Positions 11,501-56,000 of a stretch of DNA of 64,000 nt are shown in pieces. The stretch covers positions 62,001-126,000 of the forward strand of contig NW_027252691.1 in assembly GCF_044704955.1 (NCBI RefSeq), given 5' to 3'. The DNA is from Pristiophorus japonicus (lineage: Eukaryota). The translations under genes and the position numbers were made by a program. Every line of letters starts with the position of its first letter. The stretch's first letter is position 1. Below the pieces are notes generated by a model. The model was not told the origin of the DNA. It did no database searches and worked only from the letters and a program-made list of their open reading frames with translations.

Positions 11501-13212
11501 TGGTGCAGTGTGAGACGTACCGACACCATTCCCTCTCCATGGTGCAGGCAGTGTGAGACGTACCGACACCATTCCCCCTCCATGGTGCAGTGTGAGACGT
11601 ACCGACACCATTCCCCCTCCATGGTGCAGTGTGAGACGTACCGACACCATTCCCCCTCCACGGTGCAGTGTGAGACGTACCGACACCATTCCCCCTCCAT
11701 GGTGCAGTGTGAGACGTACCGACACCATTCCCTCTCCATGGTGCAGTGTGAGACGTACCGACACCATTCCCTCTCCATGGTGCAGTGTGAGACGTACCGA
11801 CACCATTCCCCCTCCATGGTGCAGTGTGAGACGTACCGACACCATTCCCCCTCCATGGTGCAGTGTGAGACGTACCGACACCATTCCCCCTCCATGGTGC
11901 AGTGTGAGACGTACCGACACCATTCCTCCTCCATGGTGCAGTGTGAGACGTACCGACACCATTCCCCCTCCATGGTGCAGTGTGAGACGTACCGACACCA
12001 TTCCCCCTCCATGGTGCAGTGTGAGACGTACCGACACCATTCCCCCTCCATGGTGCAGTGTGAGACGTACCGACACCATTCCCCCTCCATGGTGCAGTGT
12101 GAGACGTACCGACACCATTCCCCCTCCATGGTGCAGTGTGAGACGTACCGACACCATTCCCCCTCCATGGTGCAGTGTGAGACGTACCGACACCATTCCC
12201 ACTCCATGGTGCAGTGTGAGACGTACCGACACCATTCCCCCTCCATGGTGCAGTGTGAGACGTACCGACACCATTCCCCCTCTATGGTGCAGGCAGTGTG
12301 AGACGTACCTTCACCATTCCCCCTCCATGGTGCAGTGTGAGACGTACCGACACCATTCCCCCTCCATGGTGCAGCGTGAGACGTACCGACACCATTCCCC
12401 CTCCATGGTGCAGTGTGAGACGTACCGACACCATTCCCCCTCCATGGTGCAGTGTGAGACGTACCGACACCATTCCCCCTCCATGGTGCAGTGTGAGACG
12501 TACCTTCACCATTCCCCCTCCACGGTGCAGTGTGAGACGTACCGACACCATTCCCCCTCCATGGTGCAGGCAGTGTGAGACGTACTGACACCATTCCCCC
12601 TCCATGGTGCAGGCAGTGTGAGACGTACTGACACCATTCCCCCTCCATGGTGCAGTGTGAGACGTACCGACACCATTCCCGCTCCATGGTGCAGTGTGAG
12701 ACGTACCGACACCATTCCCCCTCCATGGTGCAGTGTGAGACGTACCGACACCATTCCCCCTCCATGGTGCAGTGTGAGACGTACCGACACCATTCCCTCT
12801 CCATGGTGCAGTGTGAGACGTACCGACACCATTCCCCCTCCATGGTGCAGTGTGAGACGTACCGACACCATTCCCCCTCCATGGTGCAGGCAGTGTGAGA
12901 CGTACCGACACCATTCCCCCTCCATGGTGCAGTGTGAGACGTACCGACACCATTCCCCCTCCATGGTGCAGTGTGAGACGTACCGACACCATTCCCTCTC
13001 CATGGTGCAGGCAGTGTGAGACGTACCGACACCATTCCCCCTCCATGGTGCAGTGTGAGACGTACCGACACCATTCCCCCTCCATGGTGCAGTGTGAGAC
13101 GTACCGACACCATTCCCCCTCCATGGTGCAGTGTGAGACGTACCGACACCATTCCCCCTCCATGGTGCAGGCAGTGTGAGACGTACCGACACCATTCCCC
13201 CTCCATGGTGCA
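8599..13212. repeat. 39-bp minisatellite (ggtgcagtgtgagacgtaccgacaccattccccctccat)n with 43-bp (+gcag) variants, ~115 copies
   Basis: A highly homogeneous tandem array inside the CH1-CH2 intron. Confidence 0.97.
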
Positions 13213-13356
13213 ATAGTAAATGGTGTCAATCGGTGTGGGGCGGGAACTCGAGGCGCCGACAGCCAATCGGCAGCCCACTTGTAGCTCCGCCCCATTGTCC
13301 TCACCATTGACCTCGGTGTAGGAAGGATGGACAAAAGAGAAAACGCAAGTTAAATG

Positions 13357-16300: not shown

Positions 16301-16403
16301 ATTACAGGGGGTGAATGGTGCCCTATTACAGGGGGTGAATGTGCCCTATTACAGGGGGTGAATGTGCCCTATTACAGGGGGTGAATGGTGCACTATTACA
16401 GGG
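13357..16403. repeat. 24-bp minisatellite (ggtgccctattacagggggtgaat)n, ~125 copies
   Basis: Direct tandem units give VNGALLQG repeat pseudo-ORFs. Confidence 0.97.
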
Positions 16404-17639: not shown

Positions 17640-18975
17640 GGGTGGGGGGGAAGGGGAGAGGAAGGGGAGTGTGTGTGTGGGGGGGGGGAGGGGGAGTGTG
17701 TGGGGTGGGGGAGTGTGTGGGGATGGGGGGGAGGGGTGTTGGGAGTGTGTGTGTGTGTGGGGGGGGAGGGGAGTGTGTGGGAAGGGGGGGAAGTGTGTGG
17801 GTGGGGGGGGGGGGAGTGTGTGTGCCGGGGGGGAGGGGGAGTGTGTGGGGATGGGGGGAGGGGTGTTGGGAGTGTGTGTGGATGGGGGGAGGGGACGGGG
17901 AGTGTGTGGTGAGGGGGCTAGTGTGTGGGGAGGGGGGGGAGTGTGTGGGGATGGGAGGGGAGAGGGGGGGGAGTGTGTGGGGAGGGGGGGACGTGTGTGG
18001 GGTGTGTGTGTGGGGGGGGGGAGTGTGTGTGCCGGGTGGGGGAGGGGGGAGTGTGTGGGGATGGGGGAGGGGTGTTGGGAGTGTGTGTGGATGGGGGGAG
18101 GGGACGGGGAATGTGTGGTGAGGGGGTTAGTGTGTGGGGAGGGGAGGGGGGGAGTGTGTGGGGAGGGGGGGGGATGGGGGGGAGAGGGGGAGTGTGTGGG
18201 GTGGGGGGAATGTGTGGGGAGGGGGGGGAGTGCGTGGGGAGGGGAGGGGAATGTGTGGGGAGGGGGGGAATGTGTGGGGAGGGGGGGGGAGTGTGTGGGG
18301 AGGGGGTGGGAGTGTGTGGGGATGGGGGGGAGAGGGGGGAGTGTGTGGGGAGGGGGGGGAGTATGTGGGGAGGGGGGTAGTGTGTGGGAAGGGGGGGAGT
18401 GTGTGGGAAGGGGGGAGTGTGTGGGGAGAGGGGGGAGTGTGTGGGGAGGGGGGGGAGTGCGTGGGGAGGGGGAGGGGAGTGTGTGGGGATGGGGGGAGAG
18501 GGGGGAGTGTGTGGGGAGAGGGGGAGTGTGTGGGGATGGGGGGAGAGGGGTGAGTGTGTGGGGAGAGGGGGGAGTGTGTGGGGAGGGGGGGTAGAGTGTG
18601 TGGGGAGGGGGGGGGAGTGTGTGGGGAGGGGGGGGAGTGTGTGGGGAGGGGGGGTAGAGTGTGTGGGGAGGGGGGGTAGAGTGTGTGGGGAGGAAGGGGG
18701 GAGTGTGTGGGGAGGTGGGGGGAGTGTGTGGGGAGGGGGGGGCAGTGTATGGGGAGGGGGGGAGTGTGTGGGGAGGGGGGGAGTGTGTGGGGAGGGGGGG
18801 GAGTGTGTGGGGAGGGGTGGGGAGTGTGTGGGGAGGGGGTGGGAGTGTGTGGGGAGGGGGGGGGAGTGTGTGTGGGGATGGGGGGGAGAGGGGGGAGTGT
18901 GTGGGGAGAGCGGGGAGTGTGTGGGGAGAGGGGGGAGTGTGTGGGGAGGGGGGAGTGCGTGGGGAGGGGGAGGGG
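17640..18975. repeat. G-rich low-complexity repeat (gggggagtgtgtggggag)n
   Basis: Dense G runs on the + strand, prone to G-quadruplex formation. Confidence 0.93.
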
Positions 18976-19312
18976 ACACGAGCGAGGACCCAATGGGCGG
19001 TATGACATCAGTCACCCGTTACACACTTTCATTGACTTTAGACCCGAATATCGGGCGTGTCATATCACGGGCGGTAGAGGCGATTCCGATGACATTACGT
19101 CTCCGCCCATTGTCCAATTTCAGGTGATTTCTCATTGCCCTGTATTGTGCCACCATCAGCACCGCTGGTGTCCCGGGGATAGAGTGTGGGGCACAGGGCT
19201 CCGTATCGCTTCTATTGCCCAACAGCCTCCCACATTGCTGGTGACATTTCCTCGTCCAGTTTCACCCCCGACACCAGTGCAGTTTTAAATAGCCAATCAT
19301 GTCTGTACTCAC

Positions 19313-19633
19313 TTTTAGGTCCAGGTTCTGGGGTCTGAGCCACCACCATTTCACTGTCCTTGTACCCCGCCTTGCAGTAGTAGACCCGATTAGTTTCCCA
19401 ATCTGCTGCAGAGACTTTGAGCACACTGCTCATCGTGTACGCCATATTTTGCCCCAAGACAGCCGGATACTTCTTCACTCCAGTCGTGATGTCCGCACCA
19501 TTAGTGGACCATGTCTGAATGATGCTCTTGGGCTGAAAGTCTTTGACCAGGCACAGGAAGGTGATCCCATCTTGGTTGGAGTTGCTGCCACAGGAAGGGT
19601 TGGCGATGTAGACAGATGGTTTGGACTGAACAA
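19313..19633 (-). CDS. IGHW: Ig heavy-chain constant exon CH1 (C1-set), IgW-like
   Basis: Acceptor cttccAG and donor GTGAG bound a 321-nt phase 1-1 exon that is in frame with JH. It reads [35 protein letters not shown]...TWS...KYPAVL...[25 protein letters not shown]. The extra N-terminal Cys (PSC) is typical of a light-chain-bonding CH1. Confidence 0.9.
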
Positions 19634-20337: not shown

Positions 20338-20611
20338 GATTAATGCAGTGACATTGATTTGGAGATTAACGCAGTGACATTGATTGGGAGATTAACGCAG
20401 TGACATTGATTGGGAGATTAACGCAGTGACATTGATTGGGAGATTAACGCTGTGACATTGATTGGGAGATTAACGCAGTGACATTGATTGGGAGATTAAC
20501 GCACTGACATTGATTGGGGGATTAATGCAGTGACATTGATTGGGAGATTAATGCAGTGACATTGATTGGGGGATTAACGCAGTGACATTGATTGGGAGAT
20601 TAACGCACTGA
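20338..20611. repeat. 26-bp minisatellite (attgattgggagattaatgcactgac)n, block 1
   Basis: Tandem units that continue at 22138 and 24722 after LINE insertions. Confidence 0.92.
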
Positions 20612-22139
20612 CAATTATAGCAGATGCATTCGTTATAATCGACCAAAATTCTCTGGACTCTGGGGAGGTACCAGCGGATTGGAAAGCAGCTAATGTAACG
20701 CCTCTGTTTAAAAAAGGGGGCAGACAAAAGGCAGGTAACTATAGGCCAGTTAATTTAACATCTGTAGTGAGGAAAATGCTTGAAACCATCATTAAGGAAG
20801 AAATAGCAGGACATCTAGATAGGAATAGTGCAATCAAGCAGACGCAACATGGATTCATGAAGGGGAAATCATGTTTAACTAATTTACTTCTTTGAGGATA
20901 TAACGAGCATGGTGGATAGAGGTGTACCGATGGATGTGGTGTATTTAGATTTCCAAAAGGCATTCGATAAGGTGCCACACAAAAGGTTACTGCAGAAGAT
21001 AAAGGTACGCGGAGTCAGAGGAAATATATTAGCATGGATCGAGAATTGGCTGGCTAACAGAAAGCAGAGAGTCAGGATAAATGGGTCCTTTTCAGGTTGG
21101 AAATTGGTGGTTAGTGGTGTGCCACAGGGATCGGTGCTGGGACCACAACTGTTTACAATATACATAGATGACCTGGAAGAGGGGACAGAGTGTAGCGCAA
21201 CAAAATTTGCAGATGACACAAAGATTAGTGGGAAAGCGGGTTGTGTAGAGGACACAGAGGCTGCAAAGAGATTGAGATAGGTTAAGCGAATGGGCTAATG
21301 TTTGCCAGATGGAATACAATGTCGTAAAATGTGAGGTCATCCACCTTGGAAAACAAAACATTAAAAGGGAATATTATTTGAATGGGGAGAAATTGCAACA
21401 TACTGCGGTGCAGAGGGACCTGGGGGTCCTTGTGCATGAATCCCAAAAAGTTAGTTTGCAGGTGCAGCAGGTAATCAGGAAGGCGAATGGAATGTTGGCC
21501 TTCATTGCGAGAGGGATGGAGTACAAAAGCAGGGAGGTCCTGCTGCAACTGTACAGGGTATTGGTGAGGCCGCACCTGGAGTACTGCGTGCAGTTTTGGT
21601 CACCTTACTTAAGGAAGGATATACTAGCTTTGGAGGGGGTACAGAGACGATTCACTCGGCTGATTCCGGAGATGAGGGGGTTACCTTATGATGATAGATT
21701 GAGTAGACTGGGTCTTTAATCGTTGGAGTTCAGAAGGATGAGGGGTGATCTTATAGAAACATTTAAAAAAATGAAAGGGATAGACAAGATAAGAGGCAGA
21801 GAGGTTGTTTCCACTGGTCGGGGAGACTAGAACTAGGGGGCACAGCCTCAAAATACAGGGGAGCCAATTTAAAACTGAGTTGAGAAGGAATTTCTTCTCC
21901 CAGAGGGTTGTGAACCTGTGGAATTCTCTGCACAAGGAAGCAGTTGAGGCTAGCTCATTGAATGTATTCAAATCACAGATAGATAGATTTTTAACCAATA
22001 AGGGAATTAAGGGTTACGGGGAGCGGGCGGGTAAGTGGAACTGAGTCCACGGCCAGATCAGCCATGATCTTGTTGAATGGTGGAGCAGGCTCGAGGGGCT
22101 AGATGGCCTACTCCTGTTCCTAATTCTTATGTTCTTATG
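20612..22139 (+). mobile_element. CR1 LINE, 5'-truncated and frameshifted
   Basis: ORFs carry [23 protein letters not shown] and KFADDTK, followed by a (ttcttatg)n tail. Confidence 0.93.
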
Positions 22140-22752
22140 ATTGGGAGATTAATGCACTGACATTGATTGGGAGATTAATGCGCTGACATTGATTGGGAGA
22201 TTAATGCGGTGACACTGATTGGGAGATTAGTGCACTGATATTGATTGGGAGATTAATGCACTGACATTGATTGGGCGATTAATGCGGTGACACTGATTGG
22301 GAGATTAGTGCACTGATATTGATTGGGAGATTAATGCGCTGACATTGATTGGGAGATTAATGCGGTGACACTGATTGGGAGATTAGTGCACTGATATTGA
22401 TTGGGAGATTAATGCACTGACATTGATTGGGCGATTAATGCGGTGACACTGATTGGGAGATTAGTGCACTGATATTGATTGGGAGATTAATGCACTGACA
22501 TTGATTGGGAGATTAATGCGGTGACACTGATTGGGAGATTAGTGCACTGATATTGATTGGGAGATTAATGCACTGACATTGATTGGGCGATTAATGCGGT
22601 GACACTGATTGGGAGATTAGTGCACTGATATTGATTGGGAGATTAATGCACTGACATTGATTGGGAGATTAATGCACTGACATTGATTGGGAGATTAATG
22701 CACTGACATTGATTGGGAGATTAATGCAGTGACAGTGATTGGGAGATTAATG
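22138..22752. repeat. 26-bp minisatellite, block 2
   Basis: Same unit as block 1. Confidence 0.92.
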
Positions 22753-24721: not shown

Positions 24722-25187
24722 GCACTGACATCGATTGGGAGATTAATGCACTGATGTTGATTGGGAGATTAATGCGCTGACATTGATTGGGTATTAATGC
24801 ACTGACATTGATTGGGAGATTAATGCGCTGACAATGATTGGGAGATTAATGCACTGACATTGATTGGGATATAATGCACTGACGTTCATTGAGAGATTAA
24901 TGCGATGACATTGATTGGGAGACTAATGCACTGACATTGATTGGGAGATTAATGCACTGACATTGATTGGGAGATTAATGCGCTGACATTGATTGGGTAT
25001 TAATGCGCTGACATTGATTGGGTGATTAATGCGATGACATTGATTGGGGGATTAATGCACTGACATTGATTGGGAGATTAGTGCACTGACATTGATTGGG
25101 AGATTAATGCGCTGACATTGATTGGGAGATTAATGCACTGACATTGATTGGGAGATTAGTGCACTGAACAGTGATTGGGAGATTAAT
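24722..25187. repeat. 26-bp minisatellite, block 3
   Basis: Same unit as block 1. Confidence 0.92.
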
Positions 25188-35068: not shown

Positions 35069-36606
35069 TTTTAAAAACTGCTTCTTCCCCAAGGAAAACA
35101 AACTGAAGTGTCCTTAATTCCAACAATAAATCCCAAGATATTTTTAATATCCGTGCAATGCTGACTGAGGCTGTTCATTATACCGGATGGGCCTCATACA
35201 CTACATTACCGTATGAGGTTGATGGGTGTTTTTGTGACTGGAAGGATGTTTCCAGTGGGGTTCCGCAGGGCTCAGTACTGGGTCCCTTGCTTTTTCTGGT
35301 ATATATCAATGATCTAGACTTAAATGTTGGGGGTATGATTAAGAAGTTTGATACTAAAATTGGCCATGTGGTTGATAATGAAGAAGAATGCTGTGGACTG
35401 CAGGAAGATATCAATGTACTGGTCAGGTGGGCAGAACTGTGGCAAATGAAATACAAACCAAAGCTTTTACCGATATATAAAACGGAAAAGAGTGACTAAA
35501 GTAAATGTTGGTCCTTTAGAAGATGAGAAGGGGGATTTAATAATGGGAAATATGGAAATGGCTGAGACCTTAAACAATTATTTTGCTTCGGTCTTCACAG
35601 TGGAAGACACAAAAACCATGCCAGAAATTGCTGGTCACGGGAATGTGGGAAGGGAGGACCTTGAGATAATCACTATCACTAGGGGGGTAGTGCTGGACAG
35701 GCTAATGGATTTCAAGGTAGACAAGTCCCCTGGTCCTGATGAAATGCATCCCAGGGTATTAAAAGAGATGACGGATGTTATAGCAGATGCATTGGTTATA
35801 ATCTACCAAAATTCTCTGGACTCTGGGGAGGTACCAGCGGATTGGAAAGCAGCTAATGTAACGCCTCTGTTTAAAAAAGGGGGCAGACAAAAGGCAGGTA
35901 ACTATAGGCCGGTTAGTTTAACATCTGTAGTGGGGAAAATGCTTGAAACTATCATTAAGGAAGAAATTGCGGGACAGCTAGATAGGAATAGTGCAATCAA
36001 GCAGACGCAACATGGATTCATGAAGGGGAAATCATGTTTAACTAATTTACTGGAATTCTTTGAGGATATAATGAGCATGATAGATAGAGGTGTACCGATG
36101 GATGTGGTGTATTTAGATTTCAAAAAGGCATTCGATAAGGTGCCACACAAAAGGTTACTGCAGAAGATAAAGGTACGCGGAGTCAGGAAATGTAATAGCA
36201 TGGATCGAGAATTGGCTGGCTAACAGAAAGTAGACAGTCGGGATAAATGGGTCCTTTTCAGGTTGGAAATCAGTGGTTAGTGGTGTGCCACAGGGATCGG
36301 TGCTGGGACCACAACTGTTTACAATATACATAGATGACCTGGAAGAGGGGACAGTGTAGTGCAACTAAATTTGAGAATGACACTAAGATTAGTGGGAAAG
36401 CGGGTTGTGTAGAGGACACAGAGAGGCTGCAAAGAGATTTAGATAGGTTAAGCAAATGGGCTAAGGTTTGGCAGATGGAATACAATGTCGGAAAATGTGA
36501 AGTCATCCACCTTGGAAAAAAAACCGGAAAAGGGAATATTATTTGAATGGGGAGAAATTACAACATGCTGCGGTGCAGAGGGACCTGGGGGTCCTTGTGC
36601 ATGAAT

Positions 36607-36778
36607 TTTCTCTAAGATTCTTTTCCCATACCATTCGCCTCCAACCTTCCTCTTTCTGCTCATAGCTCTTGTGATGCCAACCCTTCCACTGCAGCCAGGG
36701 TTCATCCAATTCAGGATCTAATCTTGGGGCTGCAAAGACTCCAACCAGGCACAAAGAAAGTACACAGTAGATCTTCAT
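36607..36778 (-). pseudogene. CTSL: intronless 5' fragment of cathepsin L (signal peptide + start of I29 prodomain)
   Basis: MKIYCVLSLCLVGVFAAPRLDPELDEPWLQWKGWHHKSYEQKEEGWRRMVWEKNLR has the vertebrate cathepsin L pattern LD..W..WK..H.K.Y...EEGWRR..WEKNL (start of the ERFNIN region). Confidence 0.88.
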
Positions 36779-36957
36779 CCTTTCTTCTTCGCTCCCTGCC
36801 GCTCCCGGGCTACAATCTATCGTACTCGCGAGCGCCACCAGTTTTTATGGCTCGCGTCATCCCCGCACTGATACATTTTCAGCACTGATTGGCTGGCCCA
36901 TCCAGGCACGGACCACACCCAGTCACGAGATGCAGTGCTCAGAGTGTGCTGTCGATT
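36779..36957 (-). promoter_or_regulatory. captured cathepsin L 5' UTR and promoter-like sequence
   Basis: On the minus strand: TCTCGTGAC E-box/CLEAR-like motif (36922-36930), CCAAT (36888-36892), TGACG CRE half-site (36855-36859) and CATAAAAA TATA-like motif (36842-36849), ~65 nt before the ATG. The segment is CpG-rich. Confidence 0.6.
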
Positions 36958-37656
36958 CATGAATCCCAAAAAGTTAGTTTGCAGGTGCAGCAGGTAATCA
37001 GGAAGGCGAATGGAATGTTAGCCTTCATTGCGAGAGGGATGGAGTACAAAAGCAGGGAGGTCCTGCTGCAACTGTATAGGGTATTAGTGAGGCCGCACCT
37101 GGAGTACTGCGTGCAGTTTTGGTCACCTTACTTAAGGAAGGATATACTGGCTTTGGAGGGGGTACAGAGACGATTCACTAGGCTGATTCCGGAGATGAGG
37201 GGGTTACCTTATGATGATAGATTGAGTAGACTGGGTCTTTACTCGTTGGAGTTCAGAAGGATGAGGGGTGATCTTATAGAAACATTTAAAATCATGAAAG
37301 GGATAGTCAAGATAGAGGCAGAGAGGTTGTTTCCACTGGTCGGGGAGACTAGAACTAGGGGGCACAGCCTCAAAATATGGGGGAGCCAATTTAAAACAGA
37401 GTTGAGAAGGAATTTCTTCTCCCAGAGTCTGTGGAATTCTCTGCTCAAGGAAGCAGTTGAGGCTAGCTCATTAAATGTATTCAAGTCACAGATAGATAGA
37501 TTTTTAACCAATAAGGGAATAAGGGTTACGGGGAGCGGGTGGGTAAGTGGAGCTGAGTCCACGGCCAGATCAGCCATGATCTTGCTGAATGGCGGAGCAG
37601 GCTCGAGGGGCTAGATGGCCTACTCCTGTTCCTAATTCTTATGTTCTTATGTTCTT

Positions 37657-38530
37657 ATGAAATGTGAGGTAATGCATTTGGGGAGGTCTAACAAAGAAAG
37701 GGAATACACAATAAATGGTAGGACACTGAGAAGTGTAGAGGAACAAAGGGACCTGGGAGTGCAGGTCCACAGATCCCTGAAGGTAGCAGGCCAGGTGGAT
37801 AAGGTGGTTAAGAAGGCATACGGAGTGCTTGCCTTTATTGGCCGAGGCATATAATATAAGAGCACTAGTATAAAACACTAGTTAGGCCACAGCTGGAGTA
37901 CTGCCTGCAGTTCTGGTCACCACATTACAGGAAAGATGTGAATGCACTGGAGAGGGTACAGAGGAGATTTACATAGATACATAGATACATAGAAAATAGG
38001 TGCAGTTGTCGGCCATTCGGCTCTTCGAGCCTGCACCACCATTCAATATATGAGGATCTTGCCTGGGTTGGAGAATTTTGTCTATGAGGAAAGATTGGAT
38101 AGGCTGGGGTTGTTTTCTTTGGAACAGAGGTGGCTGAGGGGAGACCTGATTGAGGTGTATAAAATTATGAGGGGCCTGGATAGGGTGGATAGTAAGGATC
38201 TGTTCCCTTAGCAGAGGGGTCAACAACCAGGGAGCACACCCGATTTACTATACCACCCAAAGGCAATTGCATCTTTGTGGAATGATAAACAGGAGGAGGC
38301 CGTTCATTCAGGTAGGAGATCTAGAGGAGTGGTGGGGGTCTGGAACTCACTGCCTGAAAGGGTGGTAGAGGCAGAAACCCTCACCACATTTAAAAAGTAC
38401 TTGGATGTGCCGTAACCTACAGGGCTACGGATCAAGAGCTGGAAAGTGGGATTAAGCTGGGTAGCCTCTTGGTCAGCCGGCACGGACACGATGGGCTGAA
38501 TGGCCTCCTTGCATGCTGTAAATTTCGATG
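37657..38530 (+). mobile_element. older CR1 3' portion, fragmented by small insertions
   Basis: ORF 37657-37854 KCEVMHLGRSN...RDLGVQVHRSLK. A small inverted CR1 tail sits at 37972-38050. Confidence 0.8.
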
Positions 38531-41575: not shown

Positions 41576-42282
41576 TGCTCCACAATACAGTATCAACAGG
41601 ACACAACCTTATTACACATGCAGCCGTTTGCTATCGGTCCGGCAGCTCGCTGGTTAATGCTAAACGCTTGTTGGTGTGAGACATGTTTGATAAACACAAG
41701 TCCCTGTTTCTCATTCTGTGCAAACTATTTGCCCTCCATCAGCACTGAAATATCCAGTGGAACCTGGAACTTATTCTGTTTTACATCTAAAAGCTGTTCC
41801 TTCAACGATTTTAACTGTAACCTTAAACAACAGTCTGTGACTCCAACTGTTAAATCCCGACACAATTGGATAATGTGTTTTAACTCGGATTATAACAAAC
41901 CCCTAAAGCGCCTGCAATGTCCTACCGTCCAAATGATCAAATCTCCACCCACAGAGCAAGTGTCCCAAAACTAGAATGTGGATCCCGCAGCTCAGACTGA
42001 ACACATCCTGGAAACCCAATAACCTCCTCATTTATTAGATTCCGGGAATCAATTCTGTGGGCTTAAATCTTAACCCTTAACACTCCATCCAGTTAGCAGA
42101 TGTCAGCCACAATTACTGGGTGTATTCTTAACTCGAAAGAATGGAGTCAGTCTCGGATAGAGTCGCGTAATTATTCTGAATATCTCACCGATTTCACACA
42201 TTCGTGTATTACCGAATTCGCTAAATAACGCAAATTAAGAAAATCAATATCAGATCAGGAAGGAATGAGAAATTTGTCTTAC

Positions 42283-42330
42283 CCGAAGTCACTGTCAGCG
42301 AGGTTCCTGTGCCCCAGTAAGCAAGATAGT
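42283..42330 (-). CDS. IGHJ: Ig heavy-chain JH gene segment (YLAYWGTGTSLTVTS)
   Basis: WGxG motif, VTS end, a phase-1 GTAAG donor at 42278-42282 and an adjacent heptamer CACAGTG. Confidence 0.95.
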
Positions 42331-42369
42331 CACAGTGCTCCGTCTCCTGGTCCCAGCAATGTAGGAACT
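42331..42369 (+). other. JH recombination signal (23-spacer) with degenerate nonamer
   Basis: CACAGTG at 42331-42337, 23-nt spacer, then GTAGGAACT (4/9 match to ACAAAAACC). Confidence 0.75.
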
Positions 42370-43102: not shown

Positions 43103-43183
43103 GGTTTTTGAATGGAGGGAGCCCCCACCTCTCACACTGTGCCACCCAGTATAGGCACAGTGATACACAGCCGTACAATAACC
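43103..43183 (-). other. IGHD: DH1 segment (coding 43142-43155, CCTATACTGGGTGG) with 12/23 RSS
   Basis: GGTTTTTGA 43103-43111, 23 nt, CACTGTG 43135-43141 on one side; CACAGTG 43156-43162, 12 nt, ACAATAACC on the other. Confidence 0.93.
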
Positions 43184-43689: not shown

Positions 43690-46145
43690 TGTAGATAAAT
43701 TCAGGTTATCCACTTTGGTGGCAAAAACAGGAAGGCAGATTATTATCTGAATAGTGATGGATTCGGAAAATGGGAGATGCAACGAGACCTGGGTGCCATG
43801 GTACATCAGTCATTGAAGTTTGGCATGCAGGTACAGCAGGCGGTTAAGAAAGCAAATGGCATGTTGGCCTTCATAGCGAGGGGATTTGAATACAGGGGCA
43901 GGGAGGTGTTGCTACAGTTGTACAGGGCCTTGGTGAGGCCACACCTGGAGTATTGTGTACAGTTTTGGTCTCCTAACTTGAGGAAGGACATTCTTGCTAT
44001 TGAGGGAGTGCAGTCAGAATCAGGGGAAGTCATAACGGGGAACAAAGAAATGGCGGATCAATTGAACAAGTACTTTGGTTCGGTATTCACTAAGGAGGAT
44101 ACAAACAACCTTCCGGATATAAAAGGGGTCAGAGGGTCTAGTAAGGAAGAGGAACTGAGGGAAATCTTTATTAGTCGGGAAATTGTGTTGGGGAAATTGA
44201 TGGGATTGAAGGCAGATAAATCCCCAGGGCCTGATGGCCTGCATCCTAGAGTACTTAAGGAGGTGGCCTTGGAAATAGCGGATGCATTGACAGTCATTTT
44301 CCAACATTCCATTGACTCTGGATCAGTTCCTATGGAGTGGAGGGTAGCCAATGTAACCCCACTTTTTAAAAAAGGAGGGAGAGAGAAAACAGGGAATTAT
44401 AGACCGGTCAGCCTGACCTCAGTAGTGGGTAAAATGATGGAATCAATTATTAAGGATGTCATAGCAGTGCATCTGGAAAATGGTGACATGATAGGTCCAA
44501 GTCAGCATGGATTTGTGAAAGGGAAATCATGCTTGACAAATCTTCTGGAATTTTTTGAGGATGTTTCCAGTAAAGTGGACAAAGGAGAACCAGTTGATGT
44601 GGTATATTTGGACTTTCAGAAGGCTTTCGACAAGGTCCCACACAAGAGATTAATGTGCAAAGTTAAAGCACATGGGATTGGGGGTAGTGTGCTGACGTGG
44701 ATTGAGAACTGGTTGTCAGACAGGAAGCAAAGAGTAGGAGTAAACGGGTACTTTTCAGAATGGCAGGCAGTGACTAGTGGAGTGCCGCAAGGTTCTGTGC
44801 TGGGGCCCCAGCTGTTTACATTGTACATTAATGATTTAGACGAGGGGATTAAATGCAGTATCTCCAAATTTGCGGATGATACTAAGTTGGGTGGCAGTGT
44901 GAGCTGCGAGGAGGATGCTATTAGGCTGCAGAGTGACTTGGATAGGTTAGGTGAGTGGGCAAATGCATGGCAGATGAAGTATAATGTGGATAAATGTGAG
45001 GTTATCCACTTTGGTGGTAAAAACAGAGAGACAGACTATTATCTGAATGGTGACAGATTAGGAAAAGGGAAGGTGCAACGAGACCTGGGTGTCATGGTAC
45101 ATCAGTCATTGAAGGTTGGCATGCAGGTACAGCAGGCGGTTAAGAAAGCAAATGGCATGTTGGCCTTCATAGCGAGGGGATTTGAATACAGGGGCAGGGA
45201 GGTGTTGCTACAGTTGTACAGGGCCTTGGTGAGGCCACACCTGGAGTATTGTGTACAGTTTTGGTCTCCTAACTTGAGGAAGGACATTCTTGCTATTGAG
45301 GGAGTGCAGCGAAGGTTCACCAGACTGATTCCCGGGATGGCGGGACTGACCTATCAAGAAAGATTGGATCAATTGGGCTTGTATTCACTGGAGTTCAGAA
45401 GAATGAGAGGGGACCTCATAGAAACGTTTAAAATTCTGACGGGTTTAGACAGGTTAGATGCAGAAAGAATGTTCCCAATGTTGGGGAAGTCCAGAACCAG
45501 GGGTCACAGTCTGAGGATAAGGGGTAAGCCATTTAGGACCGAGATGAGGAGAAACTTCTTCACCCAGAGAGTGGTGAACCTGTGGAATTCTCTACCACAG
45601 AAAGTAGTTGAGGCCAATTCACTAAATATATTCAAAAGGGAGTTAGATGAAGTCCTTACTACTCGGGGGATCAAGGGTTATGGCGAGAAAGCAGGAAGGG
45701 GGTACTGAAGTTTCATGTTCAGCCATGAACTCATTGAATGGCGGTGCAGGCTAGAAGGGCTGAATGGCCTGCTCCTGCACCTATTTTCTATGTTTCTATG
45801 TCTATGTTTCTAACAATGTTCCCGATGTTGGGGAAGTCCAGAACCAGGGGTCACAGTCTAAGGATAAGGGGTAAGCCATTTAGGACCGAGATGAGGAGAA
45901 ACTTCTTCACTCAGAGAATTGTGAACCTGTGGAATTCTCTACCACAGAAAGTTGTTGAGGTCAATTCATTAGATATATTCAAAAGGGAGTTAGATATGGC
46001 ACTTACAGTTAAAGGGATCAAGGGGTATGGAGAGAAAGCAGGAATGGGGTACTGAAGTTGCGTGACCAGCCATGATCATATTGAATGGTGATGCAGGTTC
46101 GAAGTGCCGAAAGGCCTACTCTTGCACCTATTTTCTATGTTTCTG
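43690..46145 (+). mobile_element. young CR1 LINE with an internal junction and a duplicated 3' end; 643-aa open RT ORF
   Basis: ORF 43777-45708 contains the full RT core ([20 protein letters not shown]). A second 3' copy lies at 45813-46143. Confidence 0.93.
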
Positions 46146-48145: not shown

Positions 48146-51100
48146 TGTAGTGTTTCTGCATCTTGTTACAAACTCATACGAGGCATGGATATATCAGACC
48201 CGGTCACTCTGTGACCTTCACTTTATTCCCAGGACTAAAGAGTGCTGATCCTGGGTGGGACCTCCCCTTTTATACCTGGAAGCCCAGGTGAGGAGCTCAC
48301 TCCCTGTGGTCAGGGTGTGCATTACAAGGTACAGGTACAGTGTGCATGAGTTACAGTTACATACTTATAGTCATTGCAAGATGGTGAAATACATGACATC
48401 ACCTCCCCCTCAGGTCTTTTAGTTTCAGGGGTTAAGTCTATCGGGTGGTCGGCGCTCTTTCGTGGAGCGCTGCAGTTGTGACTCTGGTGGCTGAGCCTCA
48501 GCACGTGTCTCTGTCACTTGAGGTGATTCCGGCCTGTCCGGGCTGGCCGCAGGGACTGTGCATGCTGAGGGCTGTCTTTGTTGCTCGTACGCTGGCAGTG
48601 GTGTGGGTTCTATCTCATCATGCTCTTCTTCCGGTTCCTCCGTGTCTGCACTGAACCTTTTCTTTACTTGGTCCAAGTGTTTGCGGCATATCTGCCCATT
48701 GTTTAGTCTGACCACCATGACCCTGTTTCCTTCTTTGCCAATTACGGTGCCCTCAAGCCACTTGGGTCCCAAAGCATGGTTAAGAACAAATACCGGGTCA
48801 TCTATTTCTATCCACCTCCCCCTTGAGCCTCGATCATGGAGCTCGGTTTGGGACTGGCGCTTGCCCTCAACAATGTCTGCCAGGGCTGGGTGAATGAGGG
48901 ACAGCCGCGTCTTGAGCGTGCGTTTCATGAGGAGTTCCGCTGGCGGGACTCCCGTGAGCGAGTGCGGGCGGGACCTGTAGGCCAGCAGGAGGCGCGATAG
49001 TCGGTACTGAAGAGAGGGTCCCTGGATACGTAGCATGTCCTGCTTTATGACTTGGACCGCCCGTTCCGCCTGGCCATTGAAAGCCGGCTTGAACGGCGCT
49101 GTCCAGACATGTTTGATCCCATTTCCCGACATAAACTCCTGGAATTCATGGCTGGTGAAACACGGGCCATTGTCGCTGATCAGGATGTCCGGCAAGCCGT
49201 GGGTCGCGAAAACTGTAGGCAGACTCTCCACAGTGATGGATGTCGTGCACGAGTTCAATATGATGCACTCGATCCACTTCGAGTATGCATCGACAACGAT
49301 CAGGAACATTTTTCCCATGAACGGGCCCACATAGTCCATGTGAATACGTGACCATGGCCTGGTGGGCCAGGGCCACGGGCTGAGTGGGGCCTCCCTGGGG
49401 GCATTGCCCAGCTGGGCACACGTCGTGCACCTGTGAACCCAGTATTCCAGGTCTGAGTCAATCCCCGGCCACCATACATGTGACCAGGCAATGGCCTTCA
49501 TTAACACGATGCCTGGGTGCTCACTGTGGAGTTCCCTGATGAACGCTTCCCTTCCTTTCTGGAGCATGACTACCCGGCTGCCTCATAGTAGGCAGTCGGC
49601 TTGGACGGAGAGTTCATCCATCCGTCTCTGAAACAGTCTGACCTCCTCGGGGCACGCTCCGTGTGCGGGCGCCCAATCCCCAGTCAGGACACATTTCTTT
49701 ATCGTGGATAGGAGGGGGTCCCTGTTGGTCCAGAGTTTGATCTGGCGGGCTGTGATGGGGGAGCCTGCAGTGTCAAAAGCCTCAACGGCCATGACCATCT
49801 CGGCGCTCTGCTCTGACACCCCCTCGGTGGTGGCCAGTGGGAGCCTGCTGAGTGAGTCAGCGCAATTTTCGGTGCCTGGCCGGTGCCGTATGGTGTAGTC
49901 ATACGCAGCCAGTGTGAGGGCCCAGCGCTGTATGCGAGCTGACGCATTAGCGTTGACAGCCTTGCTGTCGGACAACAGGGATGTTAACGGCTTGTGGTCC
50001 GTCTCTAGCTCGAACCGTCTACCGAAAAGGTACTGATGCATCTTTTTCACACCGTACACACACGCGAGTGCCTCCTTCTCGACCATGCCGTATCCACGCT
50101 CTGCCTGGGAGAGCGACCTGGAGGCGTAAGCCACCGGTTGGAGTCGGCCGTCATCGTTACCCTGCTGCAACACAAACCCAACCCCATAGGATGATGCATC
50201 GCATGTTATGACCAGTTTTTTACAGGGGTCATACAAAGTCAACAGTTTGTTGGAACACAGCAGGTTCCTCGCTTTATTGAAAGCCCGTTCTTGACAATCC
50301 CCCCAAAACCATTCACAACCTTTACGGAGGAGCATGTGTAACGGCTCCAACAATGTGCTTAAGTTCAGCAGGAAGTTCCCAAAATAGTTCAAGAGTCCTA
50401 GGAATGATCACAACTCCGACGTGTTGCCGGGCCTGGGCGCCCGGCGAATCGCCTCCGTTTTTGATTCAGTGGGCCGGATCCCGTCTGCGGCAACCCTCCT
50501 GCCCAAAAACTCGACATCTGGGGCCAAAAACACACACTTGGCCTTTTTCAGCCACAGGCCTATCCGTTCCAATGGGCGTAGCACCTCCTCCAGGTTGCGG
50601 AGGTGTTCCTCGGTGTCTCGACCTGTTATAAGAATGTCGTCTTGGAACACGATCGTTCCAGGGATGGACTTGAGCAAGCTTTCCATGTCTCGCTGAAAGA
50701 AAGCCGCTGCCGAACGAATGCCAAACGGGCACCTATTGTAGACAAATAATCCTTTGTGTGTCATGATGGTGGTCAGAAGCTTGGATTCTTCAGCCAGTTC
50801 CTGAGTCATGTAGGCCGAAGTGAGGTCCAGCTTCATGAACAGCTTACCACCTGCCAGCGTGACAAAAAGGTCCTCCGCTCTCGGGAGCGGGTATTGGTCT
50901 TGCAGCGACACTCGGTTGATGGTGGCTTTGTAGTCGCCACAAATCCTAACCGAGCCATTTGCTTTGAGGACGGGATCAATGGGACTTGCCCAGTTGCTAA
51001 ATTCAACGGGCGAAATTATGCCCTCTCTGAGCAGCCTGTCCAGTTCACTTTCAATTTTTTCACGCATCACGTACGGCACCGTTCTGGCCTTGTGGTGCAC

Positions 51101-52698
51101 TGGTCTGGCGTCCGGAGTGGTGCGTATCACTACTTTGGTGCCCTTGAATGTTCCGACACCGGGTTCAAAGAGTGACTCGAATTTTTGCAATGCCTGCGAG
51201 CATGAACTTCGCTCCACGGATGAAATAGCGCGCACATCCCCCCATTTCCAATTCATCTCAGCTAGCCAACTCCTCCCCAAGAGCGCGGGGCCATTTCCCG
51301 GAATAATCCAGAGTAGCAGCCGGTTCTGTGATCCATTATATGTTACCACCAAGTTTGCACTGCCCAGCACTGGGATGATCTCTTTGGTGTACGTCCATAG
51401 CTGTGTCTCAATGCGTTCCAGTTTGGGCCTGCTAGCTCTGTGTGGCCATAGTCTCTCAAATTGTTGGGCACTCATGAGGGACTGGCTAGCTCCTGTATCC
51501 AGCTCCATGTACACCGGGATGCCACTCAGTAAGACTTTCATCATCATGGGTGGCGTTTTAGTGTATGAGCTGTGGATGTCAGCCACATGAACTCTCTGAA
51601 CTTCAGCATCCATGGTTGTTCCCCAGGCCTCATCCTGCATTGCAGATCCCTCGTCTGGTTCATCTGTCTCACAGACTAGCCTTGCTAGTGCCTTTTTGCA
51701 CATCCTGGCCAGGTGTCCCTTGACATTACAAATCCTACAGGTGTAAAGTTGGAACCTGCAGATTTTTGCAGTTTGCCTGGGTGGTGTCGAATTGCCCTTG
51801 CCTGCCTGTGGGGTTCTGTCATTTTTATTACATTGATTCCCTGGTTCAACGCAACTTTAAAACCAGGGCTGTGTGCATAGATTAGCTTGGTCTCCTCTTC
51901 CCCTGCCATAAAGGTCTGAGCTATCAACTCCGCCCCTTCTAAAGTCAAATCCTTAGTCTTTATGAGCTTCCTGAAAATGCCGGCATGATTAATGCCCTCG
52001 ATGAAAGAGTCCCTTAACATCTCCCCACTGCAGGCATCGGAGAACTTACAGAGACTGGCCAAACGCTGCAGTTCCACCACGAAGTCCGAGATGTTTTGAC
52101 CCTCCCGACGCCGGTGAGAGTAGAACCGGTGCCGGGCCATGTGTACGCTACTTGCCGGCTTGAGGTGCTCACTGATCAGCTGGCTGAGCTCTTTGAAGGA
52201 CTTGTCCGCTGGCTTTTGGGATGCGAGCAGGTCTTTCATCAGCGTATACGTCTGTGGACCACAGCTGGTCAGTAGATGCACCCTCCGCTTGTCAGCCGCT
52301 GTCGCTCCCAGCCAGTCCTTTGTGACAAAGCTCTGCTGGAGTCTTTCCACAAAGTCGTCCCAGTCCTCACCCACACAGTAACGTTCCTCTGTGCCACCGG
52401 TGGCCATCCTCGTGGTTCGGTGATTCCCGATTCTCGTCGCCAAATGTAGTGTCTCTGCACCTTGTTACAAACTCACACGAGGCATGTATACATCAGACAC
52501 GGTCACTCTGTGACCTTCACTTTATTCCCAGGACTAAAGAGTGCTGATCCTGGGTGGGACCTCCCCTTTTATACCTGGAAGCCCAGGTGAGGAGCTCACT
52601 CCCTGTGGTCAGGGTGTGCATTACAAGGGTACAGGTACAGTGTGCATGAGTTACAGTTACAGACTTATAGTCATTGCAAGATGGTGAAATACATGACA
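48146..52698 (-). mobile_element. full-length Ty3/Gypsy LTR retrotransposon with disrupted gag-pol
   Basis: TG...CA LTRs at 48146-48398 and 52445-52698. PBS TGGCGACGAG (complementary to the tRNA-Ser(GCU) 3' end) at ~52433-52442; PPT at 48399-48412. gag 51685-52443; protease LDTGA and RT FQDD 50408-51703; RNase H 49583-50392; integrase HHCC/DDE 48425-49567. Confidence 0.95.
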
Positions 52699-53094: not shown

Positions 53095-56000
53095 CCCAGG
53101 AATCATCCGCTAATCCTCATCATAGGCCGTCCCCCCAGAGCCAGGAATCCCCCGCTAATCCTCATCATAGGCAGCCCCCGGAGACAGGAATTCCCCGCTA
53201 ATCTTCATCATAGACCATCCCCCTGCAGCCAGGAATCCCCCGCTAATCTTCATCATAGGCAGTCCCCCGGAGCCAGGAATCCCCCGCTAATCTTCAACAT
53301 AGGTCTTCCCCCCGGAGCCAGGAATCCCCCGCTAATCCTCATCATAGGCCGTCCCCCCAGAGCCAAGAATCCCCGGCTAATCCTCATCATAGGCCAACCT
53401 CCGGAGCCAGGAATCCCCCACTAATCTTCATCACAGGCAGTCCTCCCGGAGCCAGGAATCCCCCGCTAATCTTCATCATAGACCGTCCCCGGAGCCAGGA
53501 ATCCCCCGCTAATCTTCATCATAGGCAGTCCCCCGGAGCCAGGAATCCCCCGCTAATCTTCATCATAGGCAGTCCCCCGGAGCCAGGAATCCCCCGCTAA
53601 TCTTCATCATAGGCAGTCCCCCGGAGCCAGGAATCCCCCGCTAATCTTCATCATAGGCCGTCCCCCCGGAGCCAGGAATCCCCCGCTAATCTTCATCATA
53701 GGCTGTCCCCCGGAGCCAGGAATCCCCCGCTAATCTTGAACATAGACAGTCCCCCGGAGCCAGGAATCCCCCGCTAATCTTCATCATAGGCAGTCCCCCG
53801 GAGCCAGGAATCCCCCGCTAATCTTCACCATAGGCAGTCCCCCAGAGCCAGGAATCCCCCGCTAATCTTCAGCATAGGCACTACCCCGGAGCCAGGAATC
53901 CCCTGCTAATCTTCAAAATAGGCAGTCCCCCGGAGCCAGGAATCCCCCGCTAATCTTCATCATAGGCAGTCCCCGGAGCCAGGAATCCCCCACTAATCTT
54001 CAGCATAGGCAGTCCCCTGGAGCCAGGAATCTCCCGCTAATCTTTATCATAGGCAGTCCTCCGGAGCCAGGAATGCCCCGATAATCTTCATCTTAGGCAG
54101 TCCTCCCGGAGCCAGGAATCCCCCGCTAATCTTCATCTTAGGCAGTCCTCCCGGAGCCAGGAATCCCCCGCTAATCCTCATCATAAGCAGTCCCCCCGGA
54201 GCCAGGAATCCCCCGCTAATCTTCATCATAGACAGTCCCCCCGGAGCCAGAAATCACCCGCTAATCTTCATCATAGGCCGTCCCCGGAGCCAGGAATACC
54301 CCGCTCATCTTCATCATAGGCAGTCCCCGGAGCCAGGAATCTCCCACTAATCTTCATCATCGACAGTCACCCCGGAGCCAGGAATCCTCCGCTAATCTTC
54401 ATCATAGGCAGCCCCCAGAGCCAGAAATCCCCCGGTAATCTTCATCATAGGCAGCCCCCGAAGACAGGAATCCCCCGCTAATCTTCATTATAGGCCATCC
54501 CCCGGAGCCAGGAATCCCCCGCTGATCTTCATCATAGTCCGTTCCCCGGAGACAGGAAGCCCCCGCTAATCTTCATCACAAGCAGTCCCCCAGAGCCAGG
54601 AATCCCCCGCTAATCTTCATCATAGTCCATCCACCGGAGCCAGGAATCTACCGCTAATCTTCATCATAGGCCATCCCCCAGAGCAAGGAATCACCCGCTA
54701 ATCTACATCATAAGCAGTCACCCCGGAGCCAGGAATTCCCCGCTAATCTTCATCATAGGACATCCGCCTGGAGCCAGGAATCCCCCACTAATCTTCATCA
54801 TCGGCAGTCCCCACGGAGCCAGGAATCCCCCGCAAATCTTCATCATAGGCAGTCCCCCCAGAGCCAGGAATCCCCGGGTAATCTTCATCACAGGCAGTCC
54901 CCCGGGGCCAAGAATCCCCCGCTAATCTTCATCATAGTCCGTCCCCGGAGCCAGGAATCCCCCGCTAATCCTCATCATAGGCAGCCCCCGGAGACAGGAA
55001 TTCCCCGCTAATCTTCATCATAGGCAGTCCCCGGAGACAGGAATTCCCCGCTAATCTTCATCATAGGCAGTCCCCGGAGACAGGAATCCTCCGCTAATCT
55101 TCAGCATAGGCCATCCCCCGGAGCCAGCAATCCCCCGCTAATCTTCATCATAGGCAGTCCCCCGGAGCCAGAAATCACCCGCTAATCTTCGTCATAGGCC
55201 GTCCCCGGAGCCAGGAATCCCCCGCTAATCTTCATCATAGGCAGTCCCCCCGGAGCCAGAAATCCCCCGCTAATCCTCATCATAGGCAGTCCCCCAGAGC
55301 CAGGAGTCCACCGCTAATCTTCATCATAGGCAGTCCCCGGAGCCAGGAATCCCCCGCTAATCTTCATCATAGGCAGTCCCCGGAGCCAGGAATCCCCCGC
55401 TAATCTCGATCATAGGCAGTCCCCGGAGCCAGGAATCCCCCGCTAATCTTCATCACAGGCAGTCCCCGGAGCCAGGAATCCCCCGCTAATCTTCATCATA
55501 GGCAGTCCCCGGAGCCAGGAATCCCCCGCTAATCTTCATCATAGGCCTTCCCCCCGGAGCCAGGAATCCCCCGCTAATCTTCATCTTAGGCAGTCCTCCC
55601 GGAGCCAGGAATCCCCCGCTAATCTTCATCTTAGGCAGTCCTCCCGGAGCCAGGAATCCCCCGCTAATCCTCATCATAAGCAGTCCCCCCGGAGCCAGGA
55701 ATCCCCCGCTAATCTTCATCATAGACAGTCCCCCCGGAGCCAGAAATCACCCGCTAATCTTCATCATAGGCCGTCCCCGGAGCCAGGAATACCCCGCTCA
55801 TCTTCATCATAGACAGTCCCCCCAGAGCCAGGAATCATCCGCGAATCTTCATCATAGGCAGTCCCCGGAGCCAGGAATCCCCCGCTAATCTTCATCATAG
55901 GCAGTCAACCCGGAGCGAGGAATCATCCGCGAATCTTCATCATAGGCAGTCCCCCCGGAGCCAGGAAACCCCGCTAATCTTCATCATAGGCAGTCCCCCG

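What the first reader, a model, noticed from the sequence alone, without database searches (positions are those of the whole stretch)
36600..36964. Captured cathepsin L promoter + spliced leader inside the Ig J-C intron, co-oriented with the Ig gene
Seen: a 351-bp foreign segment interrupts a CR1 and is flanked by a 7-bp duplication, CATGAAT (36600-36606 and 36958-36964). It carries E-box/CLEAR-like, CCAAT, CRE and TATA-like motifs, a short 5' UTR and 56 codons of cathepsin L with an intact signal peptide. It has no poly(A) and is antisense to the host LINE. Known: vertebrate CTSL has a non-coding first exon and an intron just before the EEGWRR motif. Both introns are absent here, which points to an RNA/cDNA template, although promoter-like sequence is included. 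Ordinary retrocopies keep the 3' end, and a LINE RT template switch would be co-oriented with the LINE. Inference: this is a templated insertion at a break. It may supply a ready-made promoter and secretion leader upstream of intact CH1-CH2, giving sterile or V-less IgW transcripts. The phase-1 donors inside it (AAG|GTTGGA, AGG|GTTGGC) are weak, and the better ATG|GTATGG is phase 0, so a fusion protein is uncertain.
Basis: partly seen in the sequence, partly recalled or inferred. Interest (0 to 1): 0.85.

Follow-up and report, generated by a model that had tools for sequence, protein, structure and literature searches.

The report
Cathepsin L mRNA fragment in shark LINE
A 351-base copy of the front end of a spliced cathepsin L messenger RNA was pasted into a jumping gene inside a shark antibody-gene intron; it is a real and young insertion, but nothing shows that it switches on or feeds the antibody gene.

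Summary
A 351-bp insert (36607-36957, gene sense on the minus strand) sits in a CR1 LINE, flanked by an exact 7-bp duplication. A 94-96% identical CR1 copy in the same window has the uninterrupted site.

The insert encodes the first 57 codons of elasmobranch-type cathepsin La, plus 179 nt upstream. Public-run contigs support a spliced RNA template. In a related species' DNA, one contig holds the upstream part and exon 2 about 870 nt apart, and the match stops where the second intron should start (after codon 41). RNA-like runs of the same species carry the coding part at 100% identity. They continue past the insert's end into exon 3, so the insert is truncated inside exon 3 with no poly(A).

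The same RNA runs carry a different 5' leader and show no depth on the 179-nt upstream part. The template was therefore a minor or upstream-initiated isoform running through promoter-like DNA.

The J segment (about 42.3 kb) and CH1 (19.6 kb) confirm the J-C intron setting and the shared orientation.

No contig supports transcription from the insert or splicing to CH1. Earlier scan notes and rough k-mer depth suggest several copies in this genome. Verdict: a young retro-fragment or templated insertion, probably neutral.

The parts
36600..36606 (.). Left copy of the 7-bp target-site duplication, CATGAAT (ATTCATG in gene sense)
   Evidence: The sister CR1 copy has this heptamer once, at 21435-21441.
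36607..36655 (-). Insert, 3' part: first 49 nt of ctsla exon 3 (K42..E57 plus 1 nt). It ends inside the exon at ..AGAGAAA, with no poly(A).
   Evidence: RNA-like contigs X5/X7 match to 36607 and then continue TTGAACTTCACAAC.. (E-I-E-L-H-N-L-E-H-S-L). The related species' genomic contig stops matching at 36656.
36656..36779 (-). Insert, middle part: ctsla exon 2, with ATG at 36778-36776, the signal peptide and the start of the propeptide (M1-Q41). A phase-0 intron site follows codon 41.
   Evidence: Organism C genomic contig matches 36656-36781 at 95%. Exon-only protein fragments end at residue 41, and P0005 retains an intron there. PDB match to procathepsin L.
36780..36957 (-). Insert, 5' part: alternative first exon / promoter-like DNA of ctsla. 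It carries CCAAT at 36892-36888, TGACG at 36859-36855 and CATAAAAA at 36849-36842. It is joined to exon 2 within the shared letters AAG|G (boundary between 36783 and 36779).
   Evidence: In organism C this part (36816-36959) lies about 870 nt upstream of exon 2 on one 2304-nt contig. In organism A DNA, a 431-nt contig holds 36796-36959 and runs on for 267 nt unlike the window. RNA-like runs show zero depth here and carry a different leader.
36958..36964 (.). Right copy of the target-site duplication, CATGAAT
35470..37652 (+). Host CR1 LINE copy. It is 5'-truncated, has an RT ORF and a 3' tail (TTCTTATG)3, and is split by the insert. It is itself nested in an older CR1-like LINE. The 5' limit is approximate.
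   Evidence: RVT_1 hit, BLAST to other copies, tail, flanks
20615..22139 (+). Sister CR1 copy (94-96% identical) with the empty insertion site at 21435-21441
42275..42337 (-). Ig heavy-chain J segment with RSS heptamer and splice donor (..LTVTS|GTAAG). It marks the upstream end of the J-C intron.
19330..19633 (-). First constant-region exon (C1-set). The acceptor AG is at 19635-19634, phase 1. It marks the downstream end of the roughly 22.6-kb J-C intron. The 3' limit is approximate.

Best explanation
This is a young, germline, RNA-templated insertion: a retro-fragment. A minor cathepsin La (ctsla) transcript began upstream of the usual leader and so contained promoter-like DNA as a long first exon. 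It had both first introns spliced out. It was reverse-transcribed from an internal point in exon 3 back to about 179 nt upstream of the ATG. The cDNA was fixed at a 7-bp staggered cut in a CR1 copy that happens to lie in an Ig J-C intron.

Shown: the insertion and its duplication; intron loss; the 3' truncation without poly(A); that the upstream part is not in the abundant mRNA; and near-identity to the parent.

Inferred: a LINE-type endonuclease and reverse transcriptase acting in trans made it (target-primed, internally primed). It has been copied to a few more places by duplication. It is a neutral passenger, not a working promoter or leader for the Ig gene.
For: The empty paralogous site and the restored LINE frame show a clean insertion with a 7-bp duplication.

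One search gives five results:
- (a) Organism C genomic contig of 2304 nt: 36816-36959 maps to record positions 418-562 and 36656-36781 to 1434-1559. Intron 1 is therefore about 0.85 kb, and a second break falls exactly after codon 41.
- (b) RNA-like runs X5/X7 of organism A match 36607-36782 with 0-1 differences at depth 1100-5500. Past 36607 they continue with exon 3 codons (E-I-E-L-H-N-L-E-H-S-L).
- (c) The same runs have depth 0 over 36785-36955 and carry another 57-59-nt leader upstream of 36782.
- (d) Organism A DNA run X1 holds the spliced form as a 171-nt contig (36611-36781, 0 differences, depth 31).
- (e) A second X1 contig (36796-36959, depth 12.3) has A at 36851, like organism C, and then leaves the window sequence. 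I read this as the parent gene.

The intron after residue 41 is independently indicated by exon-only fragments and by an intron-retaining prediction. The peptide is closest to elasmobranch cathepsin La.

The insert differs from the parent at about 1 of 340 comparable positions, whereas the host CR1 differs 4-6% from its sister. The insertion is therefore recent.

Related DNA runs of organism C hold only 0.18 of the insert's words and show the intron-containing form only.
Against: - No contig spanning the insert/CR1 junctions was listed for the DNA run; the tables were truncated and swamped by CR1. My independent read support for the junctions is therefore indirect.
- All runs were Logan contigs, which drop rare variants and cannot show transcript starts or absence of expression.
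- X5/X7 are only inferred to be RNA.
- The parent locus of this species could not be fetched (look-up of encoding contigs closed). Exon 1A/1B order and the true start site are unknown.
- Two CR1 copies examined here show little or no target duplication, and the target is not an L1-type TTTT/A site. The enzyme responsible is not identified.
- The multi-copy claim rests on unchecked scan notes and on depth arithmetic that the tool itself warns against.
Confidence: 0.72

Rival explanations
1. The insert is a break-repair patch. A staggered double-strand break in the CR1 copy, not made by a LINE enzyme, was filled in and sealed by end joining with a stray partial ctsla cDNA. This would resemble class 2 templated sequence insertions.
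For: There is no poly(A), no L1-type target, and the fragment is internal at its 3' end. The parent contigs share 2 nt (TG) with the duplication at the 5' junction, matching to 36959. There may be one extra A at the 3' junction relative to an AAT/AUU-primed model. Spliced cDNA patches at breaks are documented in human (PMC5110952).
Against: Class 2 insertions are defined by the absence of target duplications, with microdeletions instead (PMC5110952). Here the duplication is an exact 7 bp with no loss of target bases. Two nucleotides of overlap occur by chance 1 time in 16.
Confidence: 0.2
2. One reading: the insert supplies a working core promoter and a signal-peptide leader. It would drive sterile or V-less transcripts through CH1-CH2 of this Ig gene.
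For: The insert shares the Ig gene's orientation, lying 5.3 kb below J and 17 kb above CH1. The CCAAT and TATA-like boxes are spaced as in a core promoter and are unchanged between organisms A and C. The start codon and signal peptide are intact.
Against: No RNA contig covers 36785-36955 or crosses from the insert into CR1; the coding-part contigs all follow the parent mRNA. The ORF stops 22 codons into antisense CR1. The natural donors were removed by splicing. The phase-1 GT sites are GTTGG-type, and the better ATG|GTATGG is phase 0 against a phase-1 CH1 acceptor. The feature is apparently present on several other pieces of the genome.
Confidence: 0.04
3. The insert is a DNA-level copy or an artefact. 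It was copied from an older, longer ctsla retrocopy elsewhere in the genome, or it is an assembly or cDNA-contamination artefact.
For: I could not list junction-spanning contigs. The window's C at 36851 is not seen in X1 contigs.
Against: The spliced form is present in the DNA run at a depth above the parent-only contig (31 against 12.3). The insertion is bounded by a perfect duplication at a site validated by a paralogue, which a chimeric join would not create. What appears to be the same 365-letter feature was read on other pieces.
Confidence: 0.04

Closest known systems
LINE-mediated processed pseudogenes / class 1 templated sequence insertions (PMC5110952)
   Same: A spliced cellular RNA was copied into DNA. 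An exact target-site duplication of at least 5 bp is present. The event is germline and heritable.
   Different: There is no poly(A) tail and no polyadenylation signal, and the target is not TTTT/A. The 3' end of the mRNA is missing, so priming was internal to exon 3, while the 5' end is over-complete. The genome is dominated by CR1-type LINEs, which normally require their own 3' hairpin and octamer tail (PMC8665684, citing Suh 2015).
Class 2 templated sequence insertions: cDNA patches at double-strand breaks (PMC5110952)
   Same: A short internal fragment of a spliced transcript, without poly(A), with possible 2-nt microhomology at one junction.
   Different: Class 2 events lack target duplications and usually show microdeletions. 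Here there is a perfect 7-bp duplication and no loss.
Vertebrate cathepsin L (ctsla/CTSL) gene 5' end
   Same: It has a signal peptide plus the start of the I29 propeptide (EEGWRR, WEKNL). It has a non-coding first exon joined a few nt before the ATG. The next intron falls after codon 41. Alternative 5' leaders exist; from my own memory, human CTSL also has alternative leaders and an NF-Y/CCAAT-dependent promoter.
   Different: Only 57 of about 337 codons are present and there is no protease domain. It is a fragment, not a gene copy.
Ig germline (sterile, I-exon) transcripts starting in the J-C intron
   Same: Position and orientation would allow such transcripts.
   Different: No transcript evidence exists. 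The promoter-like DNA is foreign and recent, and no suitable in-phase donor is present.

Membership tests
Processed retrocopy made by a LINE enzyme (class 1 TSIP type) | Introns of the parent gene absent | tested here: met
   Organism C genomic contig has about 870 nt between the upstream part and exon 2, and breaks at 36656. The RNA contigs are continuous there.
Processed retrocopy made by a LINE enzyme (class 1 TSIP type) | Target-site duplication of at least 5 bp | tested here: met
   7 bp, validated against the empty paralogous site at 21435-21441
Processed retrocopy made by a LINE enzyme (class 1 TSIP type) | Poly(A) tail and the 3' end of the mRNA | tested here: not met
   The insert ends at ..AGAGAAA inside exon 3; the parent mRNA continues TTGAAC...
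Processed retrocopy made by a LINE enzyme (class 1 TSIP type) | L1-type target, TTTT/A | tested here: not met
   The target is GTG|CATGAAT|CCC.
Class 2 TSIP (break-repair cDNA patch) | No target duplication; microdeletion, microhomology or untemplated bases at the junctions | tested here: not met
   There is an exact 7-bp duplication and no target loss. The only other junction features are a 2-nt overlap at the 5' junction and a possible extra A at the 3' junction.
Cathepsin L (papain family C1A) gene | Propeptide (I29) plus peptidase C1 domain with the catalytic Cys/His | tested here: not met
   Only residues 1-57 are present. Pfam gives no domain hit for the 57 aa, while phmmer against PDB matches procathepsin L residues 9-57. 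The ORF runs into antisense CR1 and stops.
LINE template-switch / transduction chimera | Cargo co-oriented and contiguous with a LINE 3' end, within one duplication | tested here: not met
   The cargo is antisense to the host CR1 and is bounded by its own duplication, with no LINE tail inside.
Functional promoter / I-exon of an Ig gene | Transcripts that start in the element and splice to the first C exon | tested here: inconclusive
   No contig supports this, and depth is zero over 36785-36955 in RNA-like runs. However, contigs cannot show starts or rare RNAs, and the tissues are unknown.

The most novel reading that the evidence does not exclude
The ctsla fragment keeps a working CCAAT/TATA core promoter. 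Sitting co-oriented in the J-C intron of one or several Ig clusters, it would start V-less transcripts that carry a secretion leader. A second, more mechanical possibility is that CATGAAT in this CR1 subfamily is a recurrent landing site where a non-L1 LINE enzyme pastes non-polyadenylated cellular RNA. In gene sense the site reads ATTCATG, close to the CR1 tail unit TTCTTATG.
Probability: 0.05. Interest if true: 0.65.

Novelty: new member of a known kind. Interest (0 to 1): 0.25.

Why it matters
The main value is as a clean, datable example of how cellular RNA enters the germline in a genome ruled by CR1-type LINEs, where ordinary poly(A) retrocopies are expected to be rare. The insert is a spliced, internally primed, poly(A)-less fragment with a perfect 7-bp duplication. 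It also records a rare upstream-initiated ctsla transcript, presumably one present in germ cells. If more such fragments share the target motif, they would reveal the cutting and priming preferences of a shark LINE enzyme. For antibody biology it matters only if the promoter-like piece is active. Nothing here suggests that, and its apparent presence at several loci argues for a passenger carried along by duplication.

Tried and rejected
The species' own ctsla locus was therefore not examined.
- The search for homologous proteins with an amphibian-like representative, N-terminal region only: returned 22 tetrapod proteins and no shark.
- The profile search did retrieve elasmobranch cathepsin La, but none was more than 84% identical to the peptide. 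The species' own protein was not retrieved and the species was not identified.
- The search of earlier findings by place, relatives and sequence gave nothing; the word CATGAAT is not indexed.
- Idea that CR1 itself made the 7-bp duplication: two CR1 copies checked show no clear duplication, and four intact tails show no common downstream motif. This is left as speculation.
- Clean microhomology priming at the 3' junction: the AAT/AUU pairing would give one A fewer than observed. Rejected as a firm claim.
- A 12-nt match between the alternative mRNA leader and the CR1 sense strand: about 0.15 such matches are expected by chance and the flanks do not align. Treated as chance.
- Copy number from contig depth (31 against 12.3, giving roughly 3-5 insert copies per parent copy): reported only as a rough hint, because the tool warns that depth is not copy number.
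- Ig isotype: the Atlas search returned only a generic C1-set result. IgW versus other isotypes was not tested.
Reading phase was worked out from coordinates only.

Full report
**What is in the sequence**

Reading 36300-37300 on both strands confirms the description. CATGAAT occurs at 36600-36606 and again at 36958-36964, with 351 bp between. The plus strand on either side is a CR1-type LINE ORF; an RVT_1 domain lies just upstream. That ORF is interrupted between ..RDLGVLVHE and SQKVSLQVQQ...

BLAST of the host element against the window finds a sister copy at 20615-22139, 94.1% and 95.6% identical on the two sides. Its left-side match ends at 21441 and its right-side match begins at 21435. 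The sister therefore has the heptamer once and nothing in between. The 7-bp repeat is a genuine target-site duplication of a clean insertion, not a chance repeat.

**What the insert encodes**

It ends at ..AAT CTT AGA GAA A with no A-tract.

The peptide matches human procathepsin L residues 9-57 (E 4.5e-10). It also matches cathepsin L N-termini in the 1.8-billion-protein representative library (best E 3e-17). Among full-length proteins retrieved with a profile, the closest are elasmobranch 'cathepsin La': Scyliorhinus torazame 84%, Pristis 82%, Mustelus 81%. None is close enough to be this species' own protein.

**Was the template spliced RNA?**

The single read-laying run is the main evidence. 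All four runs were Logan contigs.

- In a DNA run of a related species (organism C, X10), one 2304-nt contig carries 36816-36959 at its positions 418-562 and 36656-36781 at positions 1434-1559. About 870 nt there separate what is 35 nt apart in the insert.
- That contig stops matching at 36656, exactly after codon 41 (..Y-E-Q | K-E-E-G-W-R-R), and runs on for 745 nt.
- The codon-41 intron is independently indicated. About a dozen exon-only protein fragments end at residue 41, and one predicted protein reads through an intron at that point (P0005).
- In two small runs of the same species (X5, X7; RNA-like by behaviour, not on record as RNA), contigs match 36607-36782 with 0-1 differences at depth 1100-5500. 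Beyond 36607 they continue with TTGAACTTCACAACTTGG.., which extends the frame as E-I-E-L-H-N-L-E-H-S-L, as in other shark cathepsin La.

The parent mRNA is therefore spliced exactly as the insert is. The insert stops inside exon 3.

**The 'promoter' part**

The same RNA-like runs have zero depth over 36785-36955. Upstream of 36782 they carry a different 57-59-nt leader (gene sense ..TTTACAATATTTTCTTG|AAGGATG). The shared letters AAG|G allow both first exons to end in AAG and exon 2 to begin at GATG. This fits the organism C genomic match ending at 36781.

In the species' own DNA run (X1), a 431-nt contig covers 36796-36959 with one difference and then continues for 267 nt unlike the window. 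The difference is A at 36851, the base also seen in organism C. I read this contig as the parent gene's upstream region.

So the 179 nt are genomic DNA of the ctsla 5' region. They are separated from exon 2 by an intron and are not part of the abundant mRNA. The CCAAT box and the CATAAAAA box are unchanged between the two species. The TGACG and the partial E-box each carry a difference in organism C (table 3).

The simplest reading is that the template was a minor isoform. It started upstream of these motifs, used this stretch as a long first exon and was spliced normally. Both parent contigs match 2 nt beyond the insert (to 36959). This hints that the RNA went further upstream and that the 5' junction used a 2-nt overlap. 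That hint is weak, since such an overlap arises by chance 1 time in 16.

**Age and copy number**

The insert differs from parent sequences at about 1 of 340 comparable bases. The host CR1 differs 4-6% from its sister. The insertion is therefore much younger than the CR1 copy. Organism C runs hold only 0.18 of the insert's words and show only the intron-containing form.

In the DNA run X1 the spliced form exists as a 171-nt contig (36611-36781, no differences) at depth 31, against 12.3 for the parent-type contig. Simple k-mer bookkeeping gives roughly 3-5 insert copies per parent copy, but the tool warns that depth is not copy number.

Four earlier notes of this scan (s1-878793, s1-878191, s1-877607, s1-878152) describe what appears to be the same 365- or 172-letter cathepsin feature in a CR1 on other pieces of this genome. 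One follow-up reports an unrelated insert at the same CR1 nucleotide. I could not inspect those loci.

**Setting**

A J segment (..DYLAYWGTGTSLTVTS|GTAAG) with an RSS heptamer lies at 42275-42337 on the minus strand, and further heptamers lie upstream. A C1-set exon follows an acceptor at 19635-19634 in phase 1.

The insert is thus inside a roughly 22.6-kb J-C intron and shares the Ig gene's orientation, as stated. The intron is swollen by CR1 copies and satellites. I did not test whether the constant region is IgW.

**Mechanism**

The features are mixed. An exact 7-bp duplication with no target loss speaks for a staggered cut and target-primed synthesis. That would make it the CR1-world counterpart of class 1 templated insertions (PMC5110952).

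Against that, there is no poly(A), the target is not L1-like, and priming was internal. CR1 enzymes are thought to need their own hairpin and octamer tail (PMC8665684). The host CR1 ends in (TTCTTATG)3. Two CR1 copies examined show no clear duplication.

A break-repair patch (class 2) would explain the missing poly(A) but not the perfect duplication. Microhomology at the 3' junction is not clean: AAT/AUU pairing predicts one A fewer than observed.

In gene sense the duplicated heptamer ATTCATG resembles the CR1 tail unit without its TT. With one case this is only a lead. I put a LINE-enzyme event ahead of break repair, but the enzyme is not identified.

**Function**

Nothing supports use as a promoter or leader for the Ig gene. 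No RNA contig covers the upstream part or crosses from the insert into CR1. The ORF ends 22 codons into antisense CR1. Splicing removed the natural donors. The remaining phase-1 GT sites are poor, and the better ATG|GTATGG is phase 0 against the phase-1 CH1 acceptor.

Contigs cannot prove silence, so this stays open at low probability. I built and searched no joined ctsla-CH1 model.

**Limits**

- Junction-spanning DNA contigs were not among the rows listed.
- X5/X7 are RNA by inference only.

**Verdict**

The RNA-template inference is supported; the functional inference is not. The finding is an ordinary kind of event in an unusual form. Interest is about 0.25.

Noticed in passing
window 37628-37651; also 22116-22139, and minus-strand tails near 41098 and 28583: These shark CR1 copies end in 2-3 copies of the octamer TTCTTATG (or TTCTTGTG). 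This is close to the ATTCTRTG tail of amniote CR1s. The insert's duplicated heptamer in gene sense, ATTCATG, resembles this unit.
   Followed up: partly
window 20338-20613, 22138-22752, 24722-25187: A 26-bp satellite (TGATTGGGAGATTAATGCACTGACAT) flanks the sister CR1 on both sides. The CR1 landed inside the array with no clear target duplication; about 3 nt of the unit are unaccounted for.
   Followed up: partly
window 35158-35470 and 37650-38000: The host CR1 is itself nested in an older CR1-like LINE. That LINE's ORF (..WQMKYKP | KCEVMHFGRSNKEREYTINGRTL..) resumes right after the host's tail.
   Followed up: partly
window 8605-13212, 13353-16403, 17644-18976, 53096-64000: Very long tandem arrays (39-mer x116, 24-mer x128, a G-rich 20-38-mer block, 44-mer x247) lie between the C exons, in the J-C intron just upstream of CH1, or beyond the cluster.
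   Followed up: no
window 48425-52443, minus strand: Four consecutive long ORFs look like gag, protease-RT, RNase H and integrase of an LTR retrotransposon (Ty3/gypsy-like by motif). It lies upstream of the V-D-J side of the cluster.
   Followed up: no
window 42740, 43135-43162: RSS-like heptamers (CACAGTG/CACTGTG) lie upstream of J, two of them 14 nt apart as around a D segment. No V exon was located between them and the CR1 block at 43777-46144.
   Followed up: no
Read laying loose end at 36782 (X5, X7): The abundant ctsla mRNA of this species uses a 5' leader (gene sense ..GTGTTTACAATATTTTCTTG) unrelated to the insert's upstream part. It shares a 12-mer with the CR1 sense strand (36316-36327), probably by chance.
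   Followed up: partly
window 36851: The window has C here. The parent-type contig of the same species and the related species both have A. This could serve as a marker for the insert copy or copies, but the C form was not seen in the DNA run's contigs.
   Followed up: no
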